From contig NC_067403.1 of NCBI RefSeq assembly GCF_016432865.1, positions 261,578,001-261,642,000 on the forward strand: a DNA stretch of 64,000 bases. Reading direction: 5' to 3'. The stretch is from Antechinus flavipes (Eukaryota). The notes below the pieces were generated by a model. The model had not been told where the DNA came from, searched no databases, and worked only from the letters and a program-made list of their open reading frames with translations. Position numbers and translations under genes: made by a program. Shown in pieces: positions 10,355 through 52,482 of this stretch (position 1 is the stretch's first letter; each line of letters begins with the position of its first letter).

Positions 10355-13300
10355 CTACTCTTTCTCCAGCCCTCTGGATGAGGTCCCCGGGAGGCAGAGG
10401 CGGCACTGGAATCGGGTTTTCCAATCTTCGTCAGCGTGCTCCCTACTCACACACATGTGGTGGACCCAGCCCCGGCAGGACTCGCACTGCAGCTGGGAAG
10501 GGCAAAGTGGGATGGGGTCACGGGCGGCTCCGAGGGGAGGGGGCTTCTACCTGCCACCGAGTAATGGTTAATGCCCGGAGACCTCCAGTGGGGAGCGCTC
10601 AGCACCTTCCCGGGCTTCTGCTTGGGGGAGTTCCCATCCCCCACATTACGCCAGCCCCCATCTTCCCTCCTCGGTGCTGGAGAGCTTCCCCGGGCCCATC
10701 AGAGAATTCCAGCCTCCCGCTCCCCCCAAGCCCACTGGAATCGGGCCGGGGGAGAAGGCTCACCATGGTGAAGACGTCGCTGTTGCCGTCGTCCGTGAGC
10801 CGGTTGCAGTAGGAGCACGTGTCCTCCATGGTGACCGTCACCATGGGGCCCTTGTCCCCTTCCTGGGCGCTGTCCGGGGCCTCTGGGAGGCTGTCAAACG
10901 CGGACCAGATGTCGGTGTCCGAGTCCTCGGCGGAGGATTCCTCCAGGCTGTCCAGGTAGTCTTCGTCTTCGTCTTCCTCATCCTAGTGTGCAAAGGCAGC
11001 CGCGTCGGGAGCAACTTCAAATACCAAGGGGGAGCATTTCCCCACCCCCAGAAGGACGGGCCGGACTGGACTCGATTCCGCCACAAAATTCCATTTACAC
11101 CCCTTGGTTCTGCTGGGGGTTATTTGTTTGCTGAGGCAGTTGGGGCTAAGTGACTCGCCCGGGGTCACACAGGCAGGAAGTGAGACCAGAGAGGACTCGG
11201 CTCCTGACTTCGGGCTGGTGCTCCGTCCACTGCGCCACCAGCTGCCCGCCCGCCTTGGGTGTTAACAACCAATTCCCTGAGTTGCTTTCTTGTCCGGAGC
11301 CGCGGCAACATTCGGGCCTGGGCTCCGTGCGATAGAAAGAGCATCCCAAGGAATTGTGGCACCAGCCCCCGCTGCAAGGGGCCAGCAGGCTCCACACGGG
11401 GACTTTGCTGTGTTACATCAGGACAGCCTGCTGGGCCAAAGCCCGGGGCGGCCTCCAATACGGAGACCGGGGCCAAAGCCCTTACGGAGACCGGGGCCAA
11501 AGCCCCGGGCGGCCTCCAGTACGGAGACTGGGGCCAAAGCCCTTACGGAGACCAGGGCCAAAGCCCTTATGGAAACCAGGGCCAAAGCCCCGGGCGGCCT
11601 CCAAAATGGAGACAGGGGCCAAAGCCCTTAGGGAGACCGGGGCCAAAGCCCGGGGCGGCCTCCAGTACGGAGACCGGGACCAAAGCCCCAGGCAGCCTCC
11701 AAAATGGAGACCGGGGCCAAAACCCTTAGGGAGACCCCGGCCAAAGCCCTTATGGAGACCAGGGCCAAAGCCCTTACGGAGACCAAGACCAAAGCCCCGG
11801 GCAGCCTCCAAAATGGAGACTGGGGCCAAAACCCCGGGGGGCCTCCAGTACGGAGCCAGGATTGCTGCCCTTTCGGGCCCTTCAGTTTCCCCATCTATGA
11901 AGTGCTTCCTCCTAACAAGCCTTTTCCTAGAAGTCGGGGAGCACAGAGAAAGGGGTGAGGGGACCGTCCCTATATAATCGAGGGGGCGCAGGGAATCAGC
12001 CACGTGCCGGGGAAATAGCCTGGGACAGGGCAAAGGAAGAGCCAGAGGGCCAGAGCTCCCGAGCACCTCCACCTGCACCTCCACCTGCGCAGGAACTTGG
12101 ACGGCCGCCGGGGTAGAGGCTGCCCCACCCCCACTCCTGGTCGGCTCTCTATCCCCCCCCCTTCCCTTCCCAAACAGAGCTCGGCAGGCTTCCCTCAGCG
12201 AGGGGAGACCCCCGGGGGGGGGGGTCACTCACGTTGTACGAGTCCCGATTCTGCAGAAAGAGGATCTTCTGGAGCTGCAGGTCCCAGTCCACCTGGTTCA
12301 GATTCACCACCAGGGAGAGCAGGCTGCAAAGGGAGGGGGCAGCAGGGGAGCGTGTCCCAGGGTCACGGGAAGGGCGGGCGGGCAGCCAGGGAGAGCCCAG
12401 CCCCGCCATGGATCGGGCTCCGATCCAAACGCTTTTCAGACCGAATCCAAAGGCGAAAGAACTAGGCTGGAGTCTGGGCAACCTGATTTTGAATTGTGGC
12501 GCGTACCTCTGCCCTGGTGGGATTGGGGGAGACCCCTGAACTACCTGCCTCCACCGGAGCGCGAGAGAAACACCCCAGAAGCCTTGGGGCCCAACCAGGC
12601 TAGGAGAGCTCTCTGAAGGCCGGCCTTCCCATCCCCCAGTCCTAGCCCTGGAGACGGTGGGACCCGAACCTCCAGAGTCCGGCTCGCCCCAGTGGTGGGA
12701 CCTCGGAGAGAAGGCCGGGCTGGGCCCCTGCACGCCCCGACAGCCCCCGAGGTCACCAGGGCCCCGGGAGGAGCTGCAGGCCCGAAGCTGAGCCACCCCC
12801 AGGAAGGGGGGAGACCCTCCCCAGCCCCATCTTACCTGCGCACAAACGAGTTTGTCTTCTCCAGGAGCCCGTGCGCTTGGGGGTGATAGACGACAATCAG
12901 GTCGCACTTGACTTTTGTTTCCGCTCTCAAGATCTGATTGAGCTGAAAGAGCGGGTGGGAGGGAAGGAAAAGGGGGCTGCTGAGCCGGAAGCCTGGGAAT
13001 TAGAGATGGCGCAGGACCTCCGGGGGGCAAGGGGCCCCTGGGTGCTTATCTGCAGTGCTGGGCCTGGCTTATCGGTACCACTCCACAGGAGAGCGCGCAA
13101 GCTCCCCAAGTCCCAGAAACCATCCCCTAACACGAAGGTGGGGCCCGATGCCCAGCCAGCTCCGCCCCCCCCCCCACGCCCGGGATGCCCCCACACCTGC
13201 TGGACAAACCCGCCGCACTGGGTGCTGACGATCCTCTCCGGGAAGCCGAAGCGGTGCACCAGCTTGAGGATCTGCTCGGCCGTCTCCTCGGGGGAGCACG

Positions 13301-16300
13301 TCTTCATGGGGGCCACCTCCACCCAGCGGGTGTAGTGGTCCACCACCACGAAGATGAAACGCGCCCCCCGGGCCGTCTGCTTCATGGGCCCCACCAGCTG
13401 CAGGCCCACCAGGTGGAACAGGCCCCTGGCCTGGGGGCGAAGGGCGCGGTCAGGGCAGGAGCCGCAGCCGGCAGCGTGCCAGCCGGCGGGCACTGCCAGC
13501 ATGTTTGCCAGGCCCGATACGGGCTTGGAAGGGGCTCAGCAGGGGGAGGTACTTGGGAGCTGGGAGCCAGCAAGCCTGGGGTGCCAGACTCATAACCCAC
13601 CCTCCTAAGGGCTCAGTTTCCTCATCCGAACCCCCCAGCTGGTACTGTGGCAAGGCTGAAGGCACAGCCCGCGGCTCCGAACCCTGGCACTGACCAGCTG
13701 TGTGACCCCGGCGGTCTTCCCACGGGAGCCTCGAGAATTCCAGGGCCCCGGAGAAGCCTCTTCCCCAAGGACGTTGCCGCCAGCCCGGCTTCTGAGCTTC
13801 TCTGTGCCGTCCCCTCCTCCCCACCCTGGCACAGAAAAGGAGGGGCTCTTCCCTCCGATGCCCATCTAGGAGCAAATGCCCCTCCTCCCCACAGAGAACT
13901 GGGAGCTCACTGAAGGCAGGGGCGCCTCTGTCTGCTCCATCCCCTCTGAGCCCGGTGCAGGCCCACAGTAAATGGGGGCGAGTCCCACAAGTTCCCCTTC
14001 ACCCACTTATCTTAGAATGTGTTTGGGGGGACCCAAGGAGGACTTTGCCAGAGGGATGAGAACTCAGTCCTGGGGGGCAACTTGGCGGGGACCCCCTTCC
14101 TCACTGCCCCCGGTCTCTTTTAGGTGCAGCAGGTTCTTCGTACGCCCTGGCGCCCGACAAGGTACCTGGGCCGCAGGGAGCTCCCTTCGGGATTGGGGGG
14201 GCTCCTTCTTGGCCTTCAGCTCGGTCGTCGGCCCTTCTTTCTTAGGAGCGCGGGCCAGCTTGACTTTCTTGAAGGACTCAGTTTCCCCAATCTGTGAGGA
14301 CGAAGCACAAGGCTGGGGCTCCACCCAGGAGGGCATCTTGCCAAGGGGGAAAGAATGCCATTCTTGAGGAGGGGACCACGGAGGCGGCTGATTCCCTGCC
14401 TTTAGGGGGGCAAACACGGGCAGGAGCCCCCACCGCAGGCCCCCACTTACCTTATTAGCTCGGGTTTCCTTCTCTGCCAACTTGTCCTTCTGGCATTTCT
14501 TACACTCCTTGACCTGGAAGGGGGGGAGCGTCAGGCTTTCAGGCCGGGCCACCCCGACCTTCCCTGTCCCCCTCCTCTCTAGACCGAGCTTTGGCTGTTT
14601 TATTGAAGGGATTTGTGAAAACAATTCACCTTTTGAAAGGCGGCTGTGAAAAGTCTGGCCAGACCCACAACCAACATCCCTGGGTCAGGCAACAATATTC
14701 CTATTTTACAGCTGGAGAAACCGAGGCTCACAGAATGTGCCTTGCCAAGGGGACACCGCCAGCAAGTGAGAGTCAACCCCCAGCTCCCAGTCCAGGCGGC
14801 CCAGGTGTCAGGGACCCTGAGGGCACAGCCCCACCCCCCAACCCAGAGGCTCCGGGGCCCTAGGCAGAGTCTGCCCATCTGCGGGCTCTGCGAGGGGGCT
14901 GAGCTGCCTTAAAGGCGCGGAGAAAAGCTCCGAAGGGAAATCTCGGGAGCCTGAAGAGCAGCTGCCCGGTCAGCTGGGGGGGGGGGGGGGGGGGGGGGGG
15001 AGGGGAGGGTCAGCAGGGGCCGGGGGTCACTGTCCCGGCCAGAACCAACAGCAGCCCTCCAGTCCGGGGATTACCCAGCCCCCGGGGTCTCCAAGTGGGG
15101 TGGGCAGCTCAGAACTTTCCATAACGCGATTGTTGGCGCTTCTAACGTGTAAGAGCCAGAAACACCCGGGAGAAGCCAGAGGGGGCGGATTCCCATTAAT
15201 GTCGTCAGAGCGGACTGGGGGGCGGGGCCGGAGGAGGAGAAAACATCTTATATCTCCAGCCAATCAGCTGTGAGCCAAGGAACTCCTTAAATTCTCGAAA
15301 AAGGGGCTTAGGATCAAACTCCCCCAAACCCGCTGTGGTCCCGACTTAGGCGGAGGCTTTCCGGGGGAGGGCCGGCCAGCCTCGTTGCTACTCTGATGGC
15401 GAATCCCACCGATGGTAACCGGCCCCGGCTGTAAATCCCACCAATCCCAACCTTGGACCCCCGCCAGGGTAAAGCCGCGTCTCCCCCCTGAGTCCGCCTT
15501 GGAGGTTTGCGCAGTAAAGATGCTCCTCTGGCTCCTGGGCCAGTTACAGCTGCGGGAGGGAGGGAGGGCGGCCGCAGCCCGTCCGGGGCATGCTCCGCAG
15601 CCCTGCCCCCGCCCGCGGAGGCTTTTGGTAACATAACCAACTAAATCAGAGGTCTGGGGAAGGGGAGAGCAAGCAGCCGCCCCAAGACCAAAGGGGACTA
15701 CCCCGACCGTCGAGCTCCGGACCCTTTACAGCCCGACCTCGGGCTCCTGAAGGATCCGTTCACTCTCCTCCCCTTCGGGAACACTGAAGACGGGCGTCTA
15801 AACCACGGGAGCAACCCCGAACTGGGCGATTCCCGGAGGCGCCCGTCTGCACCCTTAACGTCTGCGCTACGCCTGAAAGGGCAGTTCTCTCCTCCCAAGG
15901 CAGACGGGCGGACAAGCGGGCAGGGGAAGGACAGGCGGACAAGCGGACGGGCGGAAGGACAGGAGGACAAATGGTCAGGAAGACAAGCCAACAGGCAGAG
16001 AAGGGGACAGGCGGGCAGGGGAAGGACAGGCGGGCAGGCCGACAGGCAGAGAAGGGCACAGGCGGGCAGGGGAAGGACAGGCGGGCAGGCCGACAGGCAG
16101 AGAAGGGAGCAGGCGGAAGGACAGGCGGACAGGCGGGCAGGGGAAGGACAGGCGGACAAGCGGGCGAAGGACAAGCGAGCAGGCCGACAGGCGGGCAGGC
16201 CGACAGGTAGAGAAGGCGGCGAAGGGCGGGCGGAAGGACAGGCGGACAGGCAAGTCGGCAGAAAGAAAGGCAAACCGCTGGGACAGGAGTTCCTTTCTTT

Positions 16301-19791: not shown

Positions 19792-19799
19792 CCTCCGCA

Positions 19800-20200
19800 G
19801 CCTGGGCCGAGAGGGGCAGCCGCGGGCCCGGGCGCTATTTAAAGCTCAGGGGCTGCCTCTTCACCCCCTCAGCCCCGCCCCCACTCCTTCCCCATCCCCC
19901 TCCCCACCATCCCCTTCCTGCTCCCGCCGGGCTGTGCAGACCTTGGCCAGAGGCTTCGGGTTTGGGCCGGGCAGCCCCAAGTGTCCCCCCAGAAGCCTCC
20001 TGGAGCCCGCTGGGGAACTCGGGCAGCGGGGGGAGGGGGCTCGGCGGGACTCCCCGGGGTCCTCCCCAGCTGGCCGGGCGCTGGCCCGCCTCTGGACTCT
20101 GCCGCCCGGAAGGGAGAGCGAGGCTTCGGGCAGCTCTGCCGCGCTCAAAAACCATTTACCGGGAAGCCGGGACTCGGCCCTGAGAGGGAGGCCGGGCTAT
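19800..20200 (-). promoter_or_regulatory. Putative promoter of copy A (TATA-like box, CpG-rich)
   Basis: TTTAAATA on - at 19843-19836, about 45 nt upstream of the ATG at 19791, within GC/CpG-rich sequence. Confidence 0.55.
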
Positions 20201-20566: not shown

Positions 20567-20694
20567 NNNNNNNNNNNNNNNNNNNNNNNNNNNNNNNNNN
20601 NNNNNNNNNNNNNNNNNNNNNNNNNNNNNNNNNNNNNNNNNNNNNNNNNNNNNNNNNNNNNNNNNNNNNNNNNNNNNNNNNNNNNNNNNNNNNN
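20567..20694. other. Assembly gap (128 N)
   Basis: Run of N. Confidence 1.
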
Positions 20695-24029: not shown

Positions 24030-27000
24030 TCACTCTGGGCCGGAGCCGGGCCCGGGGAAGCAGGCTCTGCAGCGGAACGCGCTCCTCCAGCCGTCGCCTC
24101 TGTACCACCGCTGCACGCAGGTGCGATGGGCCCAGGACTGGCAGGCGCCGCACTGCAGCTGGGAAACCGGGCAGGCTCTGGGGGGGCCGGCGCGGATCGC
24201 CCCCCTCCCCACAAAGCAGAGGGGCTCCCTGAGCTGCCCCCCCAGGGGCAGTGGGGTCCTTCAGGGACAGATTCCACCGGACCCCAGGGCTTCCTCCTGA
24301 GGTGGCCACGTCCCTCCCTGACGTGACCCGGGAGGTTGTGGCCCCCGGTCCGTCCCCCAGGAAAGCCGGGTCAGACGCAGCGGGGAGACCCCCGCATTCA
24401 GGCAGGGAGCACGCTGGGAGGGGGGGTCCCCGGAAGCAGGGGCGCGGGCTGACTCACCATGGTGAAAACTTCGCTGTTGCCTCTGTCGGCGAGCTGGTCG
24501 CAGTAGGGACACGTGTCCTCCACGCCGAGGGCGGCCACCACGACCGGCTCCGCGTCCTCGTCCGGGGACGGCTCCGAGGCCGAGGGGAAGGGAGCGGGGG
24601 GCACGGCGTCGTCACCCTCCAAGTCTCCCTCCGACCTCTCCTCCGAGCCCAGGTCGTCTTCCTCCGACTCGTTCTCCGCCTGGGGGGCGAGACCAGAACC
24701 TCAGCCCTGCCCCCAGCCCGGGCTTCCTGCCCTTCCTTTCCTGCTCCCAAGCCCTTCTGGGGTCTCTGCTCCGCCCGCGGACGGTGGAGGACCCGGCCCC
24801 GACGCCCCCGGTCCGGCCTGCGCCTTCCCCCTCCCTCCCGGGCCTTCTCCCCCTCCCCCAGGCCTTCCCCCTCCCTCCCGGGCCTTCCCCCTCCCTCCCG
24901 GGCTCTCCATCATCTCTGGGGCCAGGCGGAGGCGGAGCGTTTCTCATCTCCCTGTGACGCTGAGGCAGGAGGCAAGTGCCCGACCCTGGGGCTCTGGGCT
25001 CCCCCCCTCCCCACGCCAAGCCCAAGGCTCCGCCCCGAGCCACTGACTGACACCCCTCCAGCCTCCCAGACCGTCCCAGGGTCAGAGGTCACGGCTTCTG
25101 GACGAACCATTGGGTGTCACCGAGCGAACTCGGACAAACCGACCTGCGGCTCAGCCCGGGAGCCGGCCAGGGGAGGCCCAGGTGCCCCAGGAGTCCCTGA
25201 GGAGGCCGTCTCCCTTCTCTCCTGGGAACCTCCCCCGGCGCCGCGCCCAGGAAGCCCCTGGAGCTCATTAGGGCAGAGCCCCCCGGGCAGGGCTGAGCCC
25301 CCGCCTCTCCCCCCAAGCCCCAGCCGCCTGTGAGCCCCGGCGCGGAGGCCTCCCCCAAGGCAGAGGCCCCAGGAGCGGGGGCAGGAGGAGCCTCACCTGC
25401 ATCTGCAGGAAGAGAACGTTTGGCAGCTCCAGGTCCCAGTTGGCCGTGTTCCCTCTCACCACCAACGTGAGCAGCCTGAAAACCAAAGCAGTTTGTTGGG
25501 GTTCCACGGGGGGGGGCGTCCCCGGCGGCGGCCCTCCCTCACCTCTGCACGAAGGCGTTGGTCATCTCCAGGAGCCCGTGCGTCCGGGGCCGGTAGTTGG
25601 CTACGAGGTCACACTGGAGGTCGGCCCGGATCCTCAGGATCTGATTCAGCTGCGAGAGACGGGGGATGGGAGGCCGGCGGGGAGGAGGCCGCGGGTGGGC
25701 ACAGTCCCCGTCCCTCAGCCTCAGGGCCTCCTCCTGAACCGGCTCCGGACTAACCGGCCACCGGTAAAGGGAGCCCGGGGCTGGCGTCTCCCCCTCTGCT
25801 CCCCAGCAAAGGGGATTCTGCCGCACAGCCTTCGGCCCTCCCCGGTCTGGGGCCCAGAAAGTTCTCGCCCGGTTCTCCCAAGCTGAGCCGGCCCCCCACT
25901 CTCCTGTCCGCCCCCCCCCCCCGCACTTCCGGGGCCGGCCCAACCAGCCAGGCCCCCGATTACCAACAGGCTCCCCGAGCCCCCAATTACCAACAGGCCC
26001 CCTGATTACCCACAGGCCCCTGATTACTGACAGGCCCCTGAGCCCCCGATTACCCACAGGCCCCTGATTACTGACAGGCCCCGAGCCCCCAATTACCGAC
26101 AGGCCCCTGATTACCCACAGGCCCCTGATTACCGACAGGCCCCTGATTACCCACAGGCCCCCCACATCTGGGCCCCCATTACCCACAGGCCCCTGATTAC
26201 CCACAGGCCCCTGAGCCCCCAATTACCAACAGGCCCCCCACATCTGGGCCCCAGAGGGCCGCACCCCGGGCCGGACGCCTCCGCACCTGCCGGACAAAGT
26301 CGCCGCTCTGGGTGCAGACGATCCTCTCCGGGAAGGCGAAGCGGTACACCAGCTTGAGCACCTGCTCGGCCGTCTCCTCGGGGGAGCACGTCTTCATGGG
26401 GGCCGCCTCCACCCAGCGGGTGTAGTGGTCCACCACCACGAAGATGAAGCAGGCTCCCCGGGGCGTCTGCTCCATGGGCCCCACCAGCTGCAGGCCCACC
26501 AGGTGGAACAGGCCCCTGGCCTGGGGGCGAAGGGCGCGGTCAGGGCAACCGCGGGCACCACGCAGCCAAGGAGCTGGGGGCGGCCCCTGATCTGCCCCCC
26601 GGGCGCTTCCCACCCCTGGTACCCAGAAGGCTGGTGCGGACAAGGGCGGTACCCAGAGAACCCGTGGCTCAGCATCCGGCCCTGCCGCTGGGCACAGCCT
26701 GCCCGCCACTCCTGGCAGTGCCCACCCGAAGGGCACCAGATCTCGCCCCTCTCTTCCACACTGACCCAACGAGCTCGGAGCCCTGCCTCCCCTCCTCCCA
26801 TCCCTCGGAGGCCATTGACCACTCCCAGAATCCCCTCCCAGGCCCAGTCCGGTAGACGTGTGATGGGCACCAATGCCCCCTCGCCGGAGAAAGGGGAAAG
26901 CGGCGTACCTGGGCTGTCAGGGCCTCTTTCTTGGGGGCCACCGCAGCTGGGGGCGGGAGTCTCAGGGGGGGCGAGACGGACGGCCGCTCCCTGAGCCGAG

Positions 27001-28777
27001 CCGCCGGGGCCACTCCCTTACACTTCTTAGCTCTGACCTAGGAACCAGCAGGAGGCGTCTGCAGGAGACTCCGAGAAAGACTGTCTCCCCCGCCCAGCCC
27101 CCTGCTCCCCTCAGAGCCCCCCCCAGCTCTGCCCGCAGGCCTCCCCGGCCCTTACCCTGGCACTCTGGGCCTCCTGCTTTGCTAACTTGTCTCTCTGGCA
27201 CTTCTTACACTCCTTCACCTGGGGATGGGAGAGCCCGAGCTGAAGCGGGGGTGGGGGGCTGGCCTCCGGTTCGTGACCTCCCCTCCCCTCCCCCCCAGCC
27301 GTCACTCGAATCCTGGGCCCTTCCTATGGGCGCCTTCCCGCCAGCACCCCGGGGGCGGGGGGGAAGGAGGAGGGGGATGCTCCAGCAGCTCCCAAGGTGG
27401 AAGGAGGCCCTGCGGGAACCTGGGCTTCCCGGAGGTGGAGCTGCCCAGCTGGGCGCTGCCAGGGAGGGGCCGAGGACAAGAGGTGACCTTCCAGCCACAG
27501 AGCGGGGCACGGAGCCCAGAAAGGGAGGCTGGGAGCGGGCCGGCCCCGTGCAAGGGCTCGGATTGTCCGGCGGCTCCTGGGAGCCTCCGTCCGTCCCTCC
27601 CTGCCGGGGACCCCCTCCCCTGGGGCCCCGAAGCTCAGCCTCTCTGGTTTCCCGGCAGGAAACGGGGATCACGCCGGCCGGGCCCTCACCCACTGCCGCG
27701 CGTGCAGCGTGATCCGGGGCCAGTAGTAGGACTTGGTGATGTTGATGCCGGTGGCCCGGATGCCGTGGTGCCGCTCGGCCGAGACCACGTGGGCCTCCTC
27801 GAAGGCTTCCCGCTTCTTCTCCGGGGTGAAGAGCACTCTCTGGAACTTGCCTTTGCCCTGGTAGTACAGCACGCCGCCTGGGGGCAAGCAGGCCCGCTGG
27901 GCGCCCAGGACCGGCTCAGGGCCCCCCCAGACTGCTCTCTCTGCCCCCCCCATCGGGGCTCGGCCGCCCCCTCTGGGCCGGAGGCCGGTGCCCCCCATCC
28001 GGAAGCTGCTGATCGAGGCCCGTCTCTCACTGCCCCAAACGGGGGCCTCCTTGCCTGCCGCCCCGCGGGCGTTTTCAGTCCTTTCCCATCTCTGTGGCAA
28101 AGACATTGCCGCAATTTCCTTTTCCACCCATTTTACAGATGAGGAAACTGAGCGGCTAGGAAGGGTCTGAGACTGGATTTGAACCAGGAACAGGAGCCTG
28201 ACTCCAGACCGGGCACTCCTGGCCCCCGAACAATAAGAAGGCCCCGAACCTTTGGGGTTCTACGTCCCCAGGCCTCCTGCCTAGAGGATGGCTTCCCCAC
28301 AGGTGGGCAGAGCAGCCTTCCTCCTCCAGGCCCGGCTCTCCCATCCTTCCTTCCCTTTAAGGGAAGCTTGGGAAGCCACAAGCCGCCCCCCCCCCCCACG
28401 GCCTTCCCTCCCCCCGGACACCCAGGCCCTCCTCCTGCCCGGTTAGGGAAGAGCGAGACCCAGGGCGTCCGAGGCCTGGGGACAGGGATGGGATCCGGAG
28501 CCCTGAGGTCCCCTGGGACGGGCTGGGAGCCAGCTCAGGACCCTGTCACAGGGAGGTCCACAAGCCCCCGGCAGCTGCTCGTACAGTGGTCAAGATCACG
28601 GCCGAGGGGCCCTGGCCGGAGTCACACACGCGGTCCGCGGCTTCGCGGAGAGCCGGACACCCTGGGCTGTATCCCGGGGCCGGAGAAACACTGACCTTCC
28701 AGGACAAAATTGGAGTTCCGACTCAGCTTCCTTTTGACGGAAGGGGTCGGGGAAGAGGTCATCCTCAAAAGCTCCAT
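24030..28777 (-). CDS. GIN/Ginger1-like integrase-PHD gene, copy B (about 410 aa, 9 coding exons)
   Basis: Exons: 28777-28696 (MELLRMTSS...NSNFVLE/G); 27877-27690 (GVLYYQG...EAHVVSAERHHG...YYWP...RQW); 27218-27156 (VKECKKC); 27037-26909 (linker); 26520-26287 (core 1); 25649-25543 (LNQIL...THGLLEMTNAFVQ); 25475-25397 (ANWDLELPNVLFLQMQ); 24679-24458 (acidic linker, EDTCPYC...FTM); 24158-24030 (LQCGACQSWAHRTC...FRCRAC...*). All junctions are GT/AG and in phase, with no disruptions. Confidence 0.9.
25955..26240. repeat. Minisatellite of about 18-26-bp units, intronic in copy B
   Basis: Repeated gcccctgattacccacag and gccccgagcccccaattaccgacag. Confidence 0.92.
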
Positions 28778-35900: not shown

Positions 35901-36764
35901 GGTGTGATTGATGGTTCTCTATGCTTGGTGCATGGGGCGATGTCATGGTTGTACAGTTGGCACATGCTCAGTGTGCCGTAGTGATGTCATCGCCCTGAGG
36001 TGTGTAAGGGCCGAGAGGCCTGGGAACTGCTGTCTCAGACGCTTTCTGTGGGAAGTCCTGGGGCTCGGGGAGTTGGAGATTTTTCCAAACAAATCCCTGA
36101 ATATTACAGTGCCCACCCTCAGGCTGCCCCATGGGAAATGGCTGCGCTTGCTTCATAGGAGACGGGGAATCTGCGGGTCTTCAGAAGGAACAGCCAGTAA
36201 GGCAGGTCCCTGGGGCTCGGTCCAGTTCTTTTCAGGCAGTTACTCAGAAGTGGGGCTCCTGGCCCGGACCCCTGCAGGAGAGGCGGGGTCGGGCTTAAGG
36301 GGAGCAATGCATCCTAAGGGCTCCCAATTAGGCCGGGTTTTTCTTCCTGCACTGTCTGAATCTCCTTCTAATCCCTCCATTAGGGGCCGGTGGATCCCTT
36401 GGATATGGGGCTTGGGGTCTTCTCTCACCCTGTCCTCTCCTCTCTTTGCCTCCGTTGAGCTTTCAAATCCCCTGTTTTTCCACATTCACAGTCTCGTCTC
36501 CTTGCCTGGGGCCCGGGCCAGCTTTCGGGAGGCCCTCGGAATGGGACTTGTTTCTGGGGGGGAGGCAGGAGGCCCGCGGCGGTCTCCGTCTCGGTCCGAG
36601 CGCTCGTGCTCCAGCCTCAGCCGCTGTCTTTCAGTCCCCCCTAGGTCTGACTCTGGCCTCTTAAACGCTCTATTACAATTAAATGCACTCATCCCACTGA
36701 GTACCAGCCAGTCATTACATCACCAGGGAGCCACCATTTGTTGCAAGATTAATTGAGTCACTAC

Positions 36765-37790
36765 ATGACCTGATGCTGAGGGAAACGAGCAGGACCAGGA
36801 GATCCTTATATACCTCAACAACGATACTGTTTGAGGATGTATTCTGATGGAAGTGGATCTCTTCCATAAAGAGAGCCTTAATTGATCAAAGATGGACAGA
36901 AGCAGCTACACCCAGAGAAAGAACACTGGGAAATGAATAGAAACTGCTTGCATTTATGTTTTTCTTCCCGGGTTATTTCTACCTTCTGAATTCAATTCTC
37001 CCTGTGCAACAGTGCTCAGTACTCAGCAGGTGATGTCATGGTTCTCTAGTTCCCATAGATACTCAGTATGGTGATGTCACTGACCCGTCCACCAGGTCAT
37101 CAAAGTGTGGGTCCCGAGGCTGGCATTTGTCTGTAAGGCTATGCCTGAAACGTAATGGGGTTAGAAATGAGGAGGGAGACTAGTTGGGGTGAAACAAAGT
37201 CTCAGTTTAATGAATGAAGAGGGTCCAGTTATATACATTTCTGAGTGGGGGGTAGCAAAGTAAAGAATGTCACACCAGATGTGTGGCAGACATCCTGGAG
37301 CCTAATCGTTATCTTGCACCTGGGCTGATAGGGCCAATTTTCTGGGATACACATCATCTTGTCTCAGGAGTTTAGGGTGTATAGTTTGTTTACGATAAGG
37401 TTGTAGCTTCAGAATTTATGTGCAGGCGATTACATTCTTCTTTAGCTCTTTGATTCCAAGGACATGGTCTCAGTACTCAGCAGGTGATGTCATGGTTCCG
37501 TAGTTCCCATAGATACTCAGTATGGTGATGTCACGGTTCTCTAATTTGCCCACGCTCAGTGTGGTGTAATGGTGGAGGAATTCTGCACACATATATTGTA
37601 TCTAGGCTATACTGTAACCTATTCAACATGTAAAGGGCTGCTTGCCATCTGGGGGAGGGGGTGGAAGGAGGGAGGCAGAGGAAAAGTCGGAACAGAAGCG
37701 AGTGCAAGGGATAATGTTGTAAAAATTACCCAGGCATGGGCTCCATCAATAAAAAGTTATAATTATGAAAAAAGAAAATGAATTGTAGAG
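36765..37790 (+). mobile_element. L1 3' end interrupted by nested LTR-like sequences (inner LTR about 37081-37465, - strand)
   Basis: The L1 3' UTR stops at about 37012 and resumes at about 37580, ending aataaaaagttataattatgaaaaaagaaaa. Confidence 0.7.
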
Positions 37791-38434: not shown

Positions 38435-41400
38435 ATGGGCCCAGCGGTGCAGGCCGGGGAGTCGGGGAGCCTGGCTCCTGTACGGGCCGCCCAGGTGCCG
38501 AGTGCTCCGGGTCTGGGCTCCCCGGGGGCCGCCCAGGTGCCGGGTGTTCCGGGTCTGGGCAGCCCGGGGGCCACCCAGGTGCCAGGTGTTCCAGGTCTGG
38601 GCTCCCCGGGGGCCACTCAGGTGCCAGGTGTTCCAGGTCTGGGCTTCCCGGGGGCCGCCCAGGTGCCAGGTGTTCCGGGTCTGGGCTCCCCGGGGGCCGC
38701 CCAGGTGCCAGGTGTTCCGGGTCTGGGCTCCCCGGGGGCCACCCAGGTGCCAGGCGCTCCGGCTCTGAGCTCCCCGGGGCTGGCCTCTGGGGATGCCCTT
38801 CCAAAGGCAGGATCTTCCTTGAAGACGAGACGTTCTGCGAAAGGTGGGTGTCTCTACAGACTTTTTGGGCGGACGCGGCTGCAGGAGCTCGGCCGAGGGA
38901 GGGCCCCTGAATCGGACCGTTAGCTCCCGCTGGCACCGGCCTGGCACCTGGAGAGGTGGCGGCTGTCAGGAAAGGCCCTCGGTGGATGGCAGGGCTGAGG
39001 TGGGCCGCGGGCAGCCAGCCAGTTCTGTCTCCCCTAGAGGACGCCTTCTACAGCCGGAGGAGAAATCGGAACCAGAAGTTTCTCTTCCTCGAGGCGGAGA
39101 AGAAGAAGGCCTTTTGGGAGGCCCACGTGGTGCAGCACAGGCACTACGGCGCGCGGACCACCTGCACCCACCTCAGGAAGAAGTACTACTGGCCGGGCAT
39201 GGCCCTCGACGTCAAGAAGTGGGTAGGAGCGGGTACGGGGAGGGCGGGCAGCCGGTTGGCACGGGGGCATCCCGATCCTGCCTCAGAACCCCCGGCAGGC
39301 GACCCTGGCCAGCTGTGTTCTCAGGCACCTGGGCCCCCATGGCCCCGAGCTCCCCCTGGATCCTCTGGCCTTGGCCAGGCTGCTCCCTCATGAGTCCAGG
39401 GGCTGGACCCCAATGGACAGTGACGGCCCTAGAAGAGGCGCTCAGGGGGCTGGGGGGCTGGGCCTGGATCCCCTAGGGAGCCCCTCCCTCTGGGGATTTC
39501 ATCCAGCTTGACCTTAACCCAGGAATAGGCTGACTGGGGAGACTTGGTGGACCCAACCTGCCATGGGCAGACAGCTGAGAGCTCACCCACTGCCCGGGGC
39601 CTGTGCCCATCAGCAAGAGGGATTGGGGATGGGGAGGGGCACTGCCCAGAGGGGCGACCTCGGCTGGGGCCCTCAAGTTCAGTTTACCCCTCTATACAGT
39701 GGGTACTGTGTGGGGCAAGCCCTTGTGGATCACTGACTGTCCGGTCTGCGCAAGTCCTTGCAACGTGAATGGGAAGTGCCCACGAGAGCGGGGGAGCAGG
39801 TCGGGGGCCGCCAGCCCCCTCCCATCTCTGGGCGGACCCAGAAGCCCTGTGCTCTCCTCACCCCCAGGTCAAGATGTGCAGGAGATGCCTAGACAAAAGC
39901 ATACGGACCGCGGCCCACAATGCCCTGGTAGGTGCCTCAATGGGGGGCCCACGGGGCAGATGGCTGGGACTGGGGCTGAGAGGGTCAGGAACCTTCTTAG
40001 CCTCCTGGAAGCAAGGGCATGGGGGGATGGGGGAGTCCTGTCCCTCTCTCTCACCCTCCTGGAAGCAAGGGCATGGGGGGATGGGGGAGTCCTGTCCCCC
40101 TCTCTCACCCTCCTGGAAGCGGGGGGATGGGGGAGTCCTGTCCCCTCTCTCACCCTCCTGGAAGCGGGGGGATGGGGGAGTCCTGTCCCCCTCTCTCACC
40201 CTCCTGGAAGCGGGGGAATGGGGGAGTCCTGTCCCTCTCTCTCACCCTCCTGGAAGCGGGGGGATGGGGGAGTTCTGTCCCCCTCTCTCACCCTCCTGGA
40301 AGCGGGGGGATGGGGGAGTTCTGTTCCCCTCTCTCACCCTCCTGGAAGCAAGGGCATGGGGGGATGGGGGAGTCCTGTCCCCCTCTCTCACCCTCCTGGA
40401 AGCTGGGGCGTGGGGGGATGCCCCTCTCTTGCCCGGATGGGGTCATTTGCTGCTTCCCCTCGGTTTGAAGGAAGCCGGATCGCAGCAAGCGCCTCAAGGA
40501 GACGGCAGGATGGATCACTTCCCGCTAGCCCAGGTACCGGGGCGGGGGCAGCGGGGGAAGGGGTTCTGGTTTCTGGCAGCTCCAGAGCTGGGGTGGATCA
40601 TTTTTAGTTGTTCTTTTCTCATCAGCAGAAGTTGCACGTTCTCTCCCCTCAAGGAGGGAGACCCAAAGCAGCCCCGCGAGGCGCTCTCTGTCCCTCCCCC
40701 CGGGCTGCCACTTCTGTGCCCGGGTGGGGCCGGGGAATCTTTACCTCCTTGGGGCCAGTTCAGGGGAGCGAGGGTCCATCATCGGCTCCTCCCCACCCTT
40801 ACACAGGCTTCTCTCTTTGGTGCCCCTGGCGCCCAGGCTTCCTTCCTGCCCCCGTCCCACACAGTTCCCCCCGGGCTTTCCCTGAGTGTTTCCTTGTGCT
40901 CGCCGAGCCCCTATCCGAGCCCGGGCTCTTCTCCCCCCTCCGCAGGAACAAGGGCTCTTCACCTTTGTCAGCTTGCAGCTCCTGGGGCCCCTGCGGCAGA
41001 CGGCCCAGGGATTCTGCTTCGCCTTCGTGGCCGTGGACTACTTCACCAAGTGGGTGCGCGCCGCGCCCATGCATTCCTGCTCCGTCAGGGAGACCAGCGC
41101 GCAGATCCTGGAGCTGGTGAAGAGGTTCGGGTTGCCAGAAGGGATCATCAGCACCGCGTCGAGCAGTTTCATCCTCCAGGTATGAAGGCGCCATCGTGGC
41201 CCCAAGTGGCCCACGGTCAGGGCCGGGGCTGCAGGGAGCAGGAAGCGAGATCCTGGCCCCTTAGCGCCACAGCTCAGCCGGGACGCTGGGCTGGGGGGCT
41301 CTCGACCCCGAACGTTCTCCTGGGGAGTCCCTGTTTGCCTCCGTCTCCCCTGGATGGGAGGGGGGCGAAGATGGGGGCAAACGGGGCCTGTATTGAATGC

Positions 41401-44218
41401 TGGGCATCCTGACCAGGCAAGCTGGGTGCGGGAGTGGGATGCTCAGCATGAGAGAGGCAGTAAAGCGCGGCGAGCAGGGAGTGCCGGGCAGGAGCGGTGT
41501 ACGGTGCTGGAGGCAGGTGGGGACTGGCAGGGCGGCCTCAGGAAGGGGCAGCTCCGGGCCTGCTGGGCACTGCGCCGGCCCCCACACACACACATTCTTG
41601 CCACATAATCATCCTTCTCATTCCCTTTTCTGTGAAATACCACCCGGTGACAAAACGTTCCGCCACATGCCGGGAATGGGCGTTCCTCTGAGTTTCTGAT
41701 TCTCGGCCCCCACAGAAAGGGACGCTTTAACACTTGGGTCTACGTAGGCCCCTTTGCTTTTCTGCTTCGGAGATAACAGGTCCAGGCTGGGCCGGCACTG
41801 GATCAGAGACACGCAGTTTAGGGCCTGAAGGCAGAGGTAGCTCTGGATTGCTTTCCAAAGGGACCACAGCTCCACCAACCATGTAGCAGTGTTCCTCGTG
41901 GCCTCGCCAACAACTTGCATTTTCGTTTTTTGTCATCTTGAGCCACTGGTTCCCATTGGAACCTGAAAATTCTTCTTTGGTCTTGCAACTCTTTAATTCT
42001 TCATGCTTTTGTGTATTGGGGGGGGGGGGGATGTTTTGGGTTTTTAAATTTTTGTTTTTGATACAGATTTTGAGAACTTGCATTTTTTTTCCTAAAAGCT
42101 TCCTTGCAGAGTTGCCTCGACACAAAGGAGAGAGCGTGGCTACCTGCCCTTATGGAGCCCAAGAACCCCCTGGGGACTGAAACTAATAGAAGTTAGCTAG
42201 CTAGCACCTCAGATATCCTAACAGCATGTTGGGTTGCCTTGTGCGTAAGGGAGTAAGTTCCCCATCATCCAAGGAATCCAAGAAATTAGATTTTCTTTTG
42301 CGTCTAGGGGAGGTCCCTTGAAACTGGAATGGCAGCCCAGCCACCACCTCTTGTGACTGGAGCTTCTGCCCTTCTGCCTCGAACCCCAGAGTGGCCATAG
42401 CTTCCTTGGCCCCTCTCTTCTGATTAATTGGGGTTTTGGTCTTATTCTTTCAGATAAACAAATTTTTGAAAATGGCTTTGAAAATGCAAAACAGCCTGGT
42501 TGTTAAATACAATCCCCAAACAGATGGGTGCCTGAAAAGCATCAGGTCCTTTGTGACTAGGTGAGCTTCACCCGGGATGGGGGGACAGGCTGGGGGCCCC
42601 GTGGTCTGAGCAGCTTCTCCCTGTCACCTCCCCTTGGATCCTGATGGGCCCCAGAGGAGCGGGTGGCCACCTAAGCAGGCTGTGGAGGGTGTGCCCATCC
42701 GGATGGAGCTGCCCGTGTGCCTGTGTTGCCCACTTAAGTGGGCCATGGTGGGCGTGTCCACCCAGATGGAGCTTCTCATGCTGCCTATATAAGTGGGATA
42801 TGATGGCATGCCCATCCAGATGGAGCTGCCCGTGTGCCCGTGTTGCCTACTTAAGTGGGCCGTGGTGGGCGTGCCCATCCAAAGGTGCCCGTGGCCCCGG
42901 GAGGGCCCGCACTAAGCCCTGGCTGTAGACACGACCCGGCCCTTTGGGCCCCCACATTTCAGGATCCTTTCTCTGGTGCTGATCATGAACCCGACCGACT
43001 GGGACCACCACCTGCATAAGATTTTCTTCCTCCAGAACCGGTGTTCGGACTACTTCGTAAGTGCTTGGCTGGCAAGGCCGGCCTCCCCCTGGAGGGGGCA
43101 CCTCTGGGCTAAGGGCCACTCGGCTGGTCAGGCGGACGGGCTTGGGAAGGAGGAGGTGTGAGTGTGGGGCTTGGAGGCAGGTCTTGGGGCCCCTTCGGGA
43201 GCAGTCCTGGGCCAGCCCGGCTCTGTCCTGGGCCCCGTGGCCTCTGCCTCAGTCATCACTTGTCACGCTCCCCAGACGCCTCCTAGCTGGGCGAGACACT
43301 TCATGGTGCTTCCCTCAGTTTCCTCATCTGTAAAATGGGAGAAGGAAATGGCCAAGCCCCCCAGTGTCTGCCAAGAAAGCCGCGAATGGGGCCATGGACA
43401 GACACAACTGGAGACTATTGGACAAAAACTGGGGGAAAGCGGAGGGGGTCCGGTTGTGGGACTGCGGCCGGGACGACGTGATCCATAGAACTGGATGGCG
43501 GGTGAGGGCCGGAGAGCGGGCTGTGTCCAGGGGACTCGGGCCTGACCCACAGGCCTCGTCCCGTCTCCGTCTCTAGGAGGAGGAAGACGAGGGTGACCTG
43601 AGGAAGCTCCATGGCGAGTCACCAGGGGCTGCCTGGGCCCCACCCCCGCGGGTCCCAGAGCCCCCACAGCCCTCCCCAGAAAGCCAGAGGGACCCCCCGG
43701 CCAAAGCCCAGGGCGAGGACACCTGTTTGTATTGTTGCCGGCTCCCGGACGAGGGGGACAGTGACGTGTTTGCCGTGGTGAGTGGGCCAGCCCGGGCCCC
43801 TGAGGAAGGCAGACCCTGCCTGGTCCTGGCTCTGGGGGGGAGGGCTTGCGGACTCCTGGAGGGCAGGACAGGGAGGGAAGGGACAGGGCTTAGCTGGGAA
43901 GGAAAGGGGGATGCCCCTGCCACCCACCACCCCCACTCACGCGTGGACCTTGTCCCCTCCCCCCAGGTGCAGTGCGACAGGTGCCCGGCGTGGGCCCACG
44001 AGCAGTGTGTGCGGAGGCAGCTTGGACGGGTGGACCCCAAAATTAGCCTCCGCTGCAAAACCTGCCTCCTGGCAGTTGTTGGGGCGCAGCCAGGGCCCCA
44101 GACCCCCAGGGCTCTGGGAGCGGGGGACGGCGGGGCAGGCAGCGTGGGGCCCGCGGGGGGGCCGGGCCCCCAGCGTGGCCCAGGTGTGCCCAGCCATCAG
44201 CTTCCCCCTTCCAAGTAG
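38435..44218 (+). CDS. GIN/Ginger1-like integrase-PHD gene, copy C (534 aa from the ATG at 38435; up to about 953 aa with the upstream repeat exon)
   Basis: Exons: 38417-38843 (...LPKAGSSLKTRRSAK/G); 39038-39222 (DAFYSRRR...EAHVVQHRHYG...YYWPGMALDVKKW); 39868-39927 (VKMCRRC); 40471-40533 (linker ending LAQ); 40946-41179 (EQGLFTFVSLQLLGP...VDYFTKWV...RFGLPEGIISTASSSFILQ); 42454-42560 (INKFL...YNPQTDGCLKSIRSFVT); 42963-43056 (NPTDWDHHLHKIFFLQNR); 43577-43777 (EDTCLYC); 43967-44218 (VQCDRCPAWAHEQC...LRCKTC...*). The core exons have the same lengths as in A (185, 234 and 107 nt). Confidence 0.9.
38488..38780 (+). repeat. 42-bp coding tandem repeat (about 6.5 copies) in copy C
   Basis: Unit encodes PGLGSPGAAQVPGV. 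Confidence 0.92.
40008..40410. repeat. ~46-bp minisatellite (about 8 copies), intronic in copy C
   Basis: ggggggatgggggagtcctgtccccctctctcaccctcctggaagc; some units carry an extra aagggcat. Confidence 0.92.
42690..42890. repeat. Imperfect ~54-63-bp tandem repeat (about 3.3 copies), intronic in copy C
   Basis: gtgcccatcc.gatggagctgcccgtgtgcc.gtgttgcc.acttaagtgggcc.tggtgggc. Confidence 0.8.

Positions 44219-52435: not shown

Positions 52436-52482
<47 letters not shown>

What the first reader, a model, noticed from the sequence alone, without database searches (positions are those of the whole stretch)
10355..44218. Cluster of three intact, intron-containing genes fusing a domesticated Gypsy/Ginger-type integrase to a PHD finger
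Seen: three paralogues (A -, B -, C +) share one exon/phase architecture. Each has an N-terminal exon, an HHCC zinc finger (EAH..x5-6..H...YYWP...W|V..C..C), an rve-like core, an acidic linker and a complete C4HC3 PHD finger. There are no stops, frameshifts or broken splice sites despite only about 55% identity between the A and B zinc-finger exons. Known: GIN1 and GIN2 are vertebrate genes derived from Ginger1/GIN transposon integrases and have no PHD. I recall GIN2 lying beside OGFOD2/ABCB9, and some Ginger1 transposons carrying a C-terminal PHD. Inference: this is an independent, probably marsupial-lineage domestication of a PHD-bearing Ginger-like transposase that expanded to a three-gene family. 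I know of no description of such a family at the OSBPL5 locus.
Basis: partly seen in the sequence, partly recalled or inferred. Interest (0 to 1): 0.93.

Follow-up and report, generated by a model that had tools for sequence, protein, structure and literature searches.

The report
Marsupial dead-integrase plus PHD gene trio
Three neighbouring, intact, selection-constrained genes in the yellow-footed antechinus encode a catalytically disabled transposon-type integrase joined to a PHD finger (a histone-tail-binding zinc finger); the family is found only in marsupials, is unnamed in databases, and was absent from the literature I could search.

Summary
Window 10355-44218 (Antechinus flavipes CM028222.1) carries three complete genes: A (-, 425 aa, 10 coding exons), B (-, 410 aa, 9) and C (+, at least 534 aa, 9). 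Every junction is GT-AG, intron phases are shared, and each gene has one terminal stop. Each encodes a degenerate YPYY-type N-module, an HHCC finger, an RNase-H-like integrase core with the DDE triad lost (Q, T, then E or K), an acidic linker and an invariant C4HC3 PHD finger. The assembly gap (20567-20694) lies between A and B, in no exon.

RefSeq models for B and C are exact substrings of my models. Orthologues keep the same order in wallaby and bilby. dN/dS is 0.06 (A), 0.15-0.39 (B) and 0.36 (C). No TIRs or extra copies were found.

It is a marsupial-restricted Ginger1/GIN-lineage integrase-PHD family that appears undescribed. However, it shares five or six intron positions and phases (including an identical 234-bp exon) with other GIN-type host genes. 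That favours duplication of an already intron-bearing host gene, with its GPY/F tail replaced by a PHD, over a fresh transposon capture. The OSBPL5 label was not verified; a TNFR neighbour was. The proposed function, a chromatin-tethered adaptor, is inferred.

The parts
10355..19791 (-). Gene A, 425 aa, 10 coding exons: 19791-19765, 19643-19556, 18099-17915 (HH half of the HHCC finger), 14513-14451 (CxxC), 14291-14166 (exon X, Lys-rich), 13430-13197 (core 1, 234 bp), 12942-12836, 12323-12233, 10982-10764 (acidic linker + PHD N-half), 10492-10355 (PHD C-half + stop)
   Evidence: Model with all junctions AG/GT. The N-terminal exons and exon X were placed using wombat P0002 and wallaby P0154. dN/dS against wallaby is 0.064.
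19835..19843 (-). TATA-like TTTAAATA about 50 bp upstream of gene A's ATG (candidate core promoter; inferred only)
   Evidence: Read directly from the sequence; not tested.
20567..20694 (.). Assembly gap (128 N) in the spacer between B's 3' end and A's 5' end; it is in no exon
24030..28777 (-). Gene B, 410 aa, 9 coding exons: 28777-28696, 27877-27690, 27218-27156, 27037-26909 (exon X), 26520-26287, 25649-25543, 25475-25397, 24679-24458, 24158-24030
   Evidence: Model. Devil P0158 shows the same junctions. RefSeq XP_051820037 (P0231) is an exact substring from residue 171 to the end. dN/dS is 0.15 against bilby and 0.39 against wallaby.
38435..44218 (+). Gene C, at least 534 aa, 9 coding exons: 38435-38843 (first in-frame ATG; holds a 14-aa x7 repeat; a further 5' exon is possible), 39038-39222, 39868-39927, 40471-40533 (exon X), 40946-41179, 42454-42560, 42963-43056, 43577-43777, 43967-44218
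   Evidence: Model. RefSeq XP_051821313 (P0151) is an exact substring, residues 281-534. The devil P0152 junctions agree. dN/dS against bilby is 0.36.
10382..10492 (-). PHD C-half of gene A (C-x2-C-x2-W-x-H-x2-C ... C-x2-C); the equivalents are B 24054-24158 (-) and C 43967-44074 (+)
   Evidence: Alignment A6. Weak profile matches to the PHD fingers of MLL1, BPTF, PHF2 and PHF8.

Best explanation
A, B and C are three functional host genes, restricted (as far as can be seen) to marsupials.

Shown: each encodes, in order, a GIN-type N-terminal module, an HHCC zinc finger, a short basic or variable linker (exon X), an RNase-H-fold integrase core without a working DDE triad, a disordered acidic linker, and a C4HC3 PHD finger.

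Inferred origin: an already domesticated, intron-bearing GIN-type integrase gene was duplicated. Its C-terminal GPY/F module was cut off at a new splice donor and replaced by two exons encoding the acidic linker and the PHD finger. The new gene was then triplicated locally, before the Australian marsupial orders diverged.

Inferred mechanism: the proteins cannot cut or join DNA. Instead they act as nuclear adaptors. The PHD finger docks on a histone H3 tail; its sequence is nearest the H3K4me3-reader class. The HHCC finger and the dead core then bind nucleic acid or partner proteins at those sites.
For: Gene reality:
- Complete ORFs with canonical junctions.
- Two RefSeq models are exact substrings of my models.
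- Orthologue dN/dS is 0.064 for A, including 0.055 over the PHD exon and 0.068 over the linker exon; 0.15-0.39 for B; 0.36 for C.
- Gene order and orientation are conserved in wallaby and bilby.

Dead catalysis: in the alignment to yeast Ty3 integrase (7q5b) the first Asp is Q, the second is T, and the Glu is kept. Q is invariant across the family. The Glu is K in gene C.

Fold: AlphaFold pLDDT is 78-95 for the N-module and HHCC finger and 67-92 for a beta3-alpha-beta-alpha-beta core. Exon X and the acidic linker come out disordered.

Origin:
- Exon sizes and phases match wallaby P0113 (121|188|57|57|234|128|169...) and turtle P0073 (..|188|72|234|95|..).
- P0113 keeps SPFQLLYGR (the GPY/F module) where the family's exon ends and the linker begins.
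- The family groups with vertebrate GIN-type proteins at 86% bootstrap.
- The YPYY-type module is retained in degenerate form.

PHD: the eight ligands are invariant. Pfam PHD is at threshold (24.6 bits against a cut-off of 24 for P0005). The nearest solved sequences are the PHD fingers of MLL1 (PHD3), BPTF, PHF2 and PHF8, matching over C-x2-C-x2-W-x-H-x2-C-V.
Against: - The function is pure inference: no expression, binding or localisation data were accessible.
- The PHD is modelled only weakly (pLDDT 43-63). The PDB matches are marginal (E 0.01-0.1). The aromatic residue that usually precedes the first Cys in H3K4me3 readers is absent (T, M, I or S there), so the histone mark is uncertain.
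- The sister relation to the P0113 group has only 51% bootstrap, and long-branch attraction is possible.
- True GIN1 and GIN2 sequences could not be retrieved, so the shared introns were compared only with GIN-type genes that the searches returned.
- RefSeq models of B and C in this species start inside the core exon, so full-length transcripts are not documented here. No A. flavipes protein for gene A was returned.
Confidence: 0.6

Rival explanations
1. One reading: an independent capture, in a marsupial ancestor, of a Ginger1-like transposase that already carried a C-terminal PHD, followed by local triplication.
For: - One Hydra Ginger1 family (Ginger1-9_HM) carries Ulp1 + PHD (PMC2836005).
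- GIN1 and GIN2 are themselves proposed to be independent captures that share transposon introns.
- P0122, an uncharacterised GIN-type protein, has a Cys-rich stretch after its integrase that weakly matches the PHD C-half (13.5 bits).
- One polyprotein, P0112, has a PHD-like half after its integrase.
- The pairing of the family with the P0113 group has only 51% bootstrap.
Against: - Five or six shared intron positions and phases with host GIN-type genes, including the extra CxxC|X intron seen only in the marsupial P0113 gene. Described Ginger1 elements have 0-4 introns, and only three of these are shared with the host genes.
- No Ulp1 or OTU domain.
- No TIRs.
- No PHD exon near the P0113 or turtle genes.
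- The P0122 match is marginal.
Confidence: 0.15
2. Same genes, different role: a defence or conflict family. The dead integrase would act as a decoy or dominant-negative partner against retroelement integrases, with the PHD placing it on chromatin. This would explain the local expansion and the faster evolution of B and C.
For: - Tandem expansion to three copies.
- Unequal constraint: dN/dS 0.06 for A against 0.36 for C.
- Gene conversion between A and B in the core exon.
- A length-variable repeat in gene C's first exon.
Against: - No dN/dS above 1 in any exon tested.
- Gene A is very strongly conserved, which is unlike an arms-race gene.
- The 2013 survey argues that integrase-derived genes did not silence their parent elements in mammals (PMC3670739).
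- There are no functional data.
Confidence: 0.2
3. The copies are decaying pseudogenes or relics, and they look intact only because GC-rich DNA has few stop codons.
For: The window is 60-70% GC and full of long spurious ORFs, for example a 547-aa stop-free frame through gene C's introns.
Against: - Orthologue dN/dS is 0.06-0.39, with dS 0.8-1.2.
- All exon-length differences are multiples of 3, and all 25 introns keep GT-AG.
- All twelve zinc ligands are invariant across three marsupial orders.
Confidence: 0.02
4. An active or recently active cut-and-paste transposon family.
For: Only the integrase homology itself.
Against: - No inverted repeats bracket any copy.
- The catalytic triad is lost.
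- Introns differ in length and content between the copies.
- Position and order are the same in three marsupial orders.
- Only a handful of proteins per species appear in the databases.
- There are no other fragments in the window.
Confidence: 0.01

Closest known systems
GIN1 and GIN2 (vertebrate host genes derived from Ginger1/GIN transposases; Bao 2010 PMC2836005, Chalopin 2012 PMC3424704)
   Same: - A standalone multi-exon gene encoding a YPYY-type N-module, an HHCC finger and an integrase core.
- A fixed genomic position.
- A partly or wholly degenerate DDE triad, as reported for GIN2.
- No TIRs.
- The family clusters with vertebrate GIN-type proteins (86% bootstrap) and shares their intron positions.
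   Different: - The family has an acidic linker and a C4HC3 PHD finger in place of the GPY/F module.
- It is a three-gene cluster, not a single gene.
- It is found only in marsupials.
- It is not at the published GIN2 position.
- Authentic GIN1 and GIN2 sequences were not retrieved, so the direct comparison is missing.
Marsupial 'P0113-type' gene (wallaby XP_072456078.1; also sugar glider, dunnart, devil, Antechinus LOC127545670 and Monodelphis), an uncharacterised GIN-type gene between a RabGAP-TBC gene and CASTOR1
   Same: - Six intron positions and phases, including the extra intron after the CxxC exon and an identical 234-bp core exon.
- The first catalytic Asp is lost in the same motif (VGLGLVGP against VGLQLVGP).
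- Marsupial distribution.
   Different: - It keeps the GPY/F module.
- It ends in a long Gln/Pro/Thr-rich repeat and has no PHD.
- It is single-copy and lies on a different chromosome record.
- It is only about 22-30% identical to the family.
Ginger1 DNA transposons, in particular Ginger1-9_HM (Ulp1 + PHD)
   Same: An integrase-type transposase with YPYY, HHCC and a core; some members have introns; one carries a PHD.
   Different: The family has no TIRs or TSDs, no Ulp1 or OTU domain, a lost DDE triad, 8-9 introns, a single syntenic locus, and purifying selection acting as on a host gene.
Imagin (a Ginger1-derived gene of malacostracan crustaceans, PMC12863088)
   Same: A domesticated multi-exon Ginger1-lineage integrase that keeps the H2C2 finger and the core, has lost the DDE triad, and is under purifying selection.
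   Different: Imagin is single-copy, has no PHD, and arose in a different animal lineage by an independent event.
Chromoviral integrases (Ty3/gypsy integrases with a C-terminal chromodomain)
   Same: The same design logic: an integrase followed by a C-terminal histone-mark reader. This comparison rests on established knowledge and was not tested here.
   Different: Those are active retrotransposon polyproteins with an intact DDE triad and a chromodomain. Here the protein is a dead, standalone host protein with a PHD finger.

Membership tests
GIN-type (Ginger1-lineage) domesticated integrase genes | HHCC (H2C2) zinc finger N-terminal to the core | tested here: met
   Pfam Integrase_H2C2 at E 9e-13 to 1e-10, above the cut-off. 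H68, H74, C104 and C107 are invariant.
GIN-type (Ginger1-lineage) domesticated integrase genes | [quoted passage not shown] | tested here: inconclusive
   The module aligns with the N-termini of GIN-type proteins. The P, F and Y positions are kept (SSPE...NFF...LYY), but the first aromatic is L.
GIN-type (Ginger1-lineage) domesticated integrase genes | RNase-H-fold integrase core | tested here: met
   Ty3 integrase 7q5b at E 8e-11. AlphaFold gives a beta3-alpha-beta-alpha-beta core with pLDDT 67-92. Pfam rve scores below its cut-off (20 bits against 32.6).
GIN-type (Ginger1-lineage) domesticated integrase genes | GPY/F module after the core | tested here: not met
   The family's exon ends after 'FLQNR' and the acidic linker follows. 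P0113, P0043, P0122 and P0073 have SPF.L.YGR at that point.
GIN-type (Ginger1-lineage) domesticated integrase genes | Conserved intron positions and phases shared among GIN genes | tested here: met
   Five are shared with the turtle GIN-type gene and six with marsupial P0113. The family was not compared with authentic GIN1 or GIN2, which could not be fetched.
GIN2 orthologue | Position between OGFOD2 and ABCB9 (PMC3424704) | tested here: not met
   The neighbours are a C2H2 zinc-finger ORF and a TNFR_c6 gene.
Ginger1 transposon (mobile) | Terminal inverted repeats of 40-270 bp with a 4-bp TSD | tested here: not met
   No inverted pair brackets any copy.
Ginger1 transposon (mobile) | Intact DDE triad | tested here: not met
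   Q, T, E in A and B; Q, T, K in C.
Ginger1 transposon (mobile) | C-terminal OTU or Ulp1 protease domain | tested here: not met
   No such Pfam hit in six family proteins.
Ginger2-derived genes (KRBA2, SCAND3/ZBED9) | KRAB or SCAN domain; integrase without the YPYY motif | tested here: not met
   No KRAB or SCAN hit. There is only a sub-threshold Znf_SCAND3 match (E 0.0018, 18.6 bits against 27) over the PHD C-half. A YPYY-type module is present.
PHD finger (PF00628) | C4HC3 ligand pattern with canonical spacing | tested here: met
   C-x2-C-x17-C-x2-C-x4-H-x2-C-x15-C-x2-C in all 12 sequences. Pfam PHD scores 24.6 bits in P0005 (cut-off 24) and 19.5-21.5 bits in P0002 and gene C.
PHD finger, H3K4me3-reader subclass | Aromatic cage including the Trp two residues before the His | tested here: inconclusive
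   The Trp is invariant, and Met sits at -3 from the third Cys in A and B. The usual aromatic before the first Cys is missing. Matches to MLL1, BPTF and PHF2 have E 0.01-0.03. The model is of low confidence.
Ty3/gypsy LTR retrotransposon | Integrase embedded in a Gag-Pol with RT and RNase H, flanked by LTRs | tested here: not met
   The proteins are standalone and start about 57 aa before the finger. There are no RT or RNase H Pfam hits. In the tree they separate from the polyprotein integrases.

The most novel reading that the evidence does not exclude
A previously undescribed, marsupial-specific family of chromatin readers. It would have been built by grafting a PHD finger onto a catalytically dead GIN-type integrase, been triplicated before the Australian marsupial radiation, and have one member (A) as tightly constrained as a core regulatory gene. 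This would be the first vertebrate integrase-PHD host protein, and a lineage-specific addition to marsupial chromatin biology.
Probability: 0.35. Interest if true: 0.75.

Novelty: new variant of a known kind. Interest (0 to 1): 0.66.

Why it matters
Domesticated integrase genes (GIN1, GIN2, NYNRIN, KRBA2, SCAND3) are known, but their functions are largely obscure.

This family adds a natural 'design experiment': a dead integrase is coupled to a histone-tail reader module, kept for more than an ordinal-level span of marsupial evolution, and expanded to three genes with very different rates of change. It raises the count of marsupial integrase-derived genes beyond the published list, and it offers a tractable handle on what dead integrase cores do in host cells.

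It also shows that GIN-type genes kept duplicating and swapping C-terminal modules inside mammals. That bears on the unresolved question of one versus several GIN domestications.

Tried and rejected
1. Word-index protein searches with wombat A, a family alignment and a GIN-type alignment. They returned only marsupial members and then generic Ty3/gypsy Pol fragments. Authentic GIN1 and GIN2 never came back, so a direct tree or intron comparison with them was not possible. No tool fetches a protein by accession.
2. P0196, a remote hit with both integrase and PHD. Its PHD lies N-terminal to the integrase, in a dNK-PHD-integrase order. I rejected it as a relative of this architecture.
3. P0122's post-integrase Cys-rich stretch as the ancestor of the PHD. 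It scores only 13.5 bits over 15 residues, and BLASTP finds nothing there. I keep it as a weak lead only.
4. A PHD exon hidden near the P0113 or turtle genes. None was found.
5. Look-ups that found no record: P0005, P0043 and the left-flank C2H2 ORF. The species of P0005, a more divergent A/B-like member, therefore stays unknown.
6. The OSBPL5 neighbour. It was not seen among the flank ORFs I scanned, and I did not search exhaustively.
7. Paralogue dN/dS (0.5-0.6) is a poor measure here, because of saturation and gene conversion. I replaced it with orthologue comparisons.
8. I did not run a fold search of the model, because the sequence match to Ty3 integrase already settles the fold.

Slip, stated as required: I asked for printed alignments before knowing the hits. 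The tool therefore printed alignments of the wombat protein to prototype foamy virus integrase entries; HIV-1 and HTLV-2 integrases were listed but not aligned. I used only the yeast Ty3 alignment and did nothing further with the viral ones.

I could not submit my own spliced A, B and C proteins to the search tools, because they have no single reference. Orthologue protein ids were used instead.
Full report
**What is there**

The window is 59% G+C with one 128-N run at 20567-20694. I refined the boundaries by looking for AG/GT sites that keep the frame and recur in all three copies.

The final models are:

| Gene | Span | Strand | Length | Coding exons |
|---|---|---|---|---|
| A | 19791-10355 | - | 425 aa | 10 |
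| B | 28777-24030 | - | 410 aa | 9 |
| C | 38435-44218 | + | at least 534 aa | 9 |

Every internal junction is AG...GT, and each CDS is a multiple of three with one terminal stop. From the N-terminal exon onward the intron phases are the same in all three genes (1,0,0,0,0,2,0,0). Exon sizes differ only by multiples of three (core exons are 234 and 107 bp in all three). The finding's coordinates are exactly A's stop codon and C's stop codon.

**The gap**

The gap lies in the spacer between B's 3' end (24030) and A's start codon (19791). It is about 775 bp upstream of A's start codon and about 3.3 kb downstream of B's stop. No model exon is near it, and tblastn with A, B and C finds nothing outside the three gene spans. 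The 'ORFs' that the ORF listing reads through the N run are artefacts. I did not look at any other copy of that stretch.

**Independent support for the models**

The window is Antechinus flavipes CM028222.1; locus L004 is identical at 23,150 of 23,150 bases. RefSeq XP_051821313 (LOC127540579, 254 aa) is an exact substring of my C model, residues 281-534. XP_051820037 (LOC127539757, 241 aa) is an exact substring of my B model from residue 171 to the end. Eight junctions are therefore reproduced by an independent annotation.

Both RefSeq models start inside the core exon, so full-length transcripts are not documented for this species, and no A. flavipes protein for A was returned. Devil, wombat, wallaby and bilby proteins (P0158, P0002, P0154, P0152, P0004) do cover the full architecture with the same junctions.

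**Domains**

- **Zinc fingers.** Pfam finds Integrase_H2C2 above threshold. It finds rve below threshold, and PHD at or just below threshold. The four HHCC ligands and the eight PHD ligands (C4HC3) are invariant in every member.
- **Catalytic triad.** The best solved relative is yeast Ty3 integrase (7q5b, E 8e-11). In that alignment the first catalytic Asp is Gln, the second is Thr, and the Glu is kept. Gene C has also lost the Glu, which is Lys there.
- **Predicted structure.** AlphaFold models the N-terminal module and HHCC finger well (pLDDT 78-95) and an RNase-H-like core reasonably (67-92). It predicts disorder for exon X and the acidic linker, and is unsure about the PHD (43-63).
- **Nearest solved PHD fingers.** A profile of the three PHD C-halves matches, weakly (E 0.01-0.1), the PHD fingers of MLL1, BPTF, PHF2, PHF8, EBS and KDM7 over the C-x2-C-x2-W-x-H-x2-C-V core.

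**Are they genes?**

Orthologue comparisons (Nei-Gojobori) give the following:

| Gene | Comparison | dN | dS | dN/dS |
|---|---|---|---|---|
| A | Antechinus vs wallaby | 0.055 | 0.856 | 0.064 |
| B | vs bilby, exons 1-7 | 0.149 | 0.967 | 0.15 |
| B | vs wallaby, exons 7-9 | 0.299 | 0.773 | 0.39 |
| C | vs bilby | 0.435 | 1.203 | 0.36 |

For A the ratio is equally low over the acidic-linker exon (0.068) and the PHD exon (0.055).

Order and orientation are conserved. Wallaby has the 3' end of a B-like gene upstream of A on the same strand. Bilby has a B-like gene head-to-head with its C-like gene, and a TNFR_c6 gene downstream, as in the window. A, B and C orthogroups have 96, 93 and 100% bootstrap, so the triplication predates the split of the dasyurid, peramelid and diprotodont lineages. 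No inverted repeats bracket any copy. Pseudogene and active-transposon readings are therefore rejected.

**Distribution**

An exhaustive HMMER search of about 1.8 billion representative proteins with the core-exon profile gave five close hits, followed by a sharp drop to generic integrases. Together with the word-index searches, all family members with a known source are marsupial. They are named only 'uncharacterized protein LOC...', 'Integrase catalytic domain-containing protein' or, automatically, 'Gypsy retrotransposon integrase-like protein 1'. Three UniParc entries have no species given; one of them (P0005) is a more divergent A/B-like member.

**Origin**

The best non-family relatives are standalone vertebrate GIN-type proteins whose H2C2 finger starts near residue 58, as in this family, and whose N-termini align with the family's. 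The N-terminal module is the YPYY-type motif that defines the Ginger1 lineage and is absent from Ginger2. Here it is degenerate.

One relative, wallaby P0113, has orthologues in glider, dunnart, devil, Antechinus and Monodelphis. It lies between a RabGAP-TBC gene and CASTOR1, which is not the published GIN2 site. The exon plans compare as follows:

| Gene | Exon sizes (bp) | Phases |
|---|---|---|
| P0113 (wallaby) | 121, 188, 57, 57, 234, 128, 169, 837 | 1,0,0,0,0,2,0 |
| P0073 (turtle) | ..., 126, 188, 72, 234, 95, 208 | same, where comparable |
| This family | 88/82, 185-188, 63/60, 126/129/63, 234, 107, 91/79/94, ... | 1,0,0,0,0,2,0,0 |

The turtle gene lacks the extra intron after the CxxC exon. 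The family thus shares five introns with the turtle gene and six with P0113.

Published Ginger1 elements have 0-4 introns, and only three of these are common to GIN1, GIN2 and Ginger1-5_HM. In a 267-column NJ tree the family groups with the P0113 group and the other vertebrate GIN-type proteins at 86% bootstrap. The specific pairing with the P0113 group gets only 51%.

P0113 and the other GIN-type proteins carry the GPY/F module (SPF.L.YGR) exactly where the family's exon stops and the acidic linker begins. The simplest history is duplication of an intron-bearing GIN-type host gene, use of a new donor site that drops the GPY/F module, addition of two exons (acidic linker + PHD), and then local triplication.

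Where the PHD came from is open. No PHD exon lies near the P0113 or turtle genes. The only hints of an ancestral finger are marginal (P0122 and P0112).

**Mechanism (inferred)**

With two or three of the three catalytic residues gone, the proteins cannot act as integrases. What is conserved is:

- two zinc modules;
- the core fold;
- a basic stretch in exon X of A and B;
- an acidic disordered linker.

I therefore propose nuclear adaptors. The PHD would dock on a histone H3 tail, and the HHCC finger and core would bind nucleic acid or partner proteins. The invariant Trp two residues before the His, and Met at -3 from the third Cys in A and B, resemble H3K4me3 readers. The usual aromatic before the first Cys is missing, so the mark is uncertain. 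A conflict or defence role is a live alternative, given the expansion and the faster evolution of B and C.

**Literature**

- Bao 2010 (PMC2836005) and Chalopin 2012 (PMC3424704) describe GIN1 and GIN2 without any PHD.
- The 2013 survey (PMC3670739) lists ten domesticated retroelement genes in marsupials, and this family is not among them.
- A 2026 paper on the crustacean Ginger1-derived gene Imagin (PMC12863088) mentions no such vertebrate family.
- A search for OSBPL5 + marsupial + integrase found nothing.

The held library is incomplete, so 'undescribed' is provisional.

One search printed alignments to foamy-virus integrase entries because I had set show_alignments before seeing the hits. 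I used only the Ty3 alignment.

**Verdict**

This is a new variant of a known kind: a GIN-type domesticated integrase with a PHD finger, expanded in marsupials.

Noticed in passing
L003:10001-18534 (wallaby); orthologues P0190-P0193, P0039: A second marsupial-wide, uncharacterised GIN-type gene (P0113 type; in Antechinus it is LOC127545670). It has 8 coding exons, has lost the first two catalytic Asp residues, keeps the GPY/F module, and has a long Gln/Pro/Thr-rich repeat tail. It lies between a RabGAP-TBC gene and CASTOR1, which is not the published GIN2 position. One devil copy is misnamed 'probable inactive serine/threonine-protein kinase'.
   Followed up: partly
window 13197-13430 (A) and 26287-26520 (B): The 234-bp core exon of A and B has dS 0.07, against 0.5-1.5 in the other exons. 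In wombat, A and B are 92% identical there but only 85-86% identical to their Antechinus orthologues. This indicates gene conversion confined to this exon, in more than one lineage.
   Followed up: yes
window 38484-38779: A 42-bp x7 tandem repeat inside gene C's first coding exon encodes a 14-aa Pro/Gly-rich repeat. The devil orthologues have fewer units, so the N-terminus varies in length.
   Followed up: partly
window 40021-40416: A 46-bp x8 tandem repeat in a gene C intron. It is part of a 547-aa stop-free frame that is not coding, which is a warning about ORF length in this GC-rich DNA.
   Followed up: partly
window 30502-31619: A 51/102-bp tandem array (about 20 units) in the B-C spacer. 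It is open in several frames on both strands (spurious 515-aa and 365-aa ORFs).
   Followed up: no
window 4265-4822 (-): An ORF of 185 aa with a C2H2 zinc finger and a sub-threshold DUF7565 match. It is the left neighbour of the cluster. No exact record was found for it, and its identity is not established.
   Followed up: partly
window 52094-56426 (+): TNFR cysteine-rich exons (Pfam TNFR_c6), annotated as a TNFR gene in the assembly. The same neighbour lies beside the bilby C-like gene, but there it is on the opposite strand to the C-like gene.
   Followed up: partly
window 46220-46804 (+) and 52585-53187 (-): Two long ORFs whose translations begin almost identically (MTELAP.VIAIITVAGSGRPCPTA...). 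This points to an inverted duplicated segment or interspersed repeat flanking the TNFR region.
   Followed up: no
window 33502-34136 and 36762-37725: Several 70-130-nt inverted repeat pairs (81-95% complementary) in the AT-rich part of the B-C spacer, probably interspersed repeats in opposite orientation. A 26-nt motif, CTCAGTTTCCTCATCTGTAAAATGGG, recurs at 28127, 29671 and 43314.
   Followed up: no
L005:1794-5917 (-) and 10001-14564 (+), turtle Mauremys mutica: Two GIN-type integrase genes lie head-to-head in the turtle. GIN-type genes therefore also occur as local pairs outside marsupials.
   Followed up: no
window 24030-28777 and 38435-44218: The A. flavipes RefSeq models of B (241 aa) and C (254 aa) begin at a Met inside the core exon and omit the zinc-finger half. 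No A. flavipes protein for gene A was returned by any search.
   Followed up: partly
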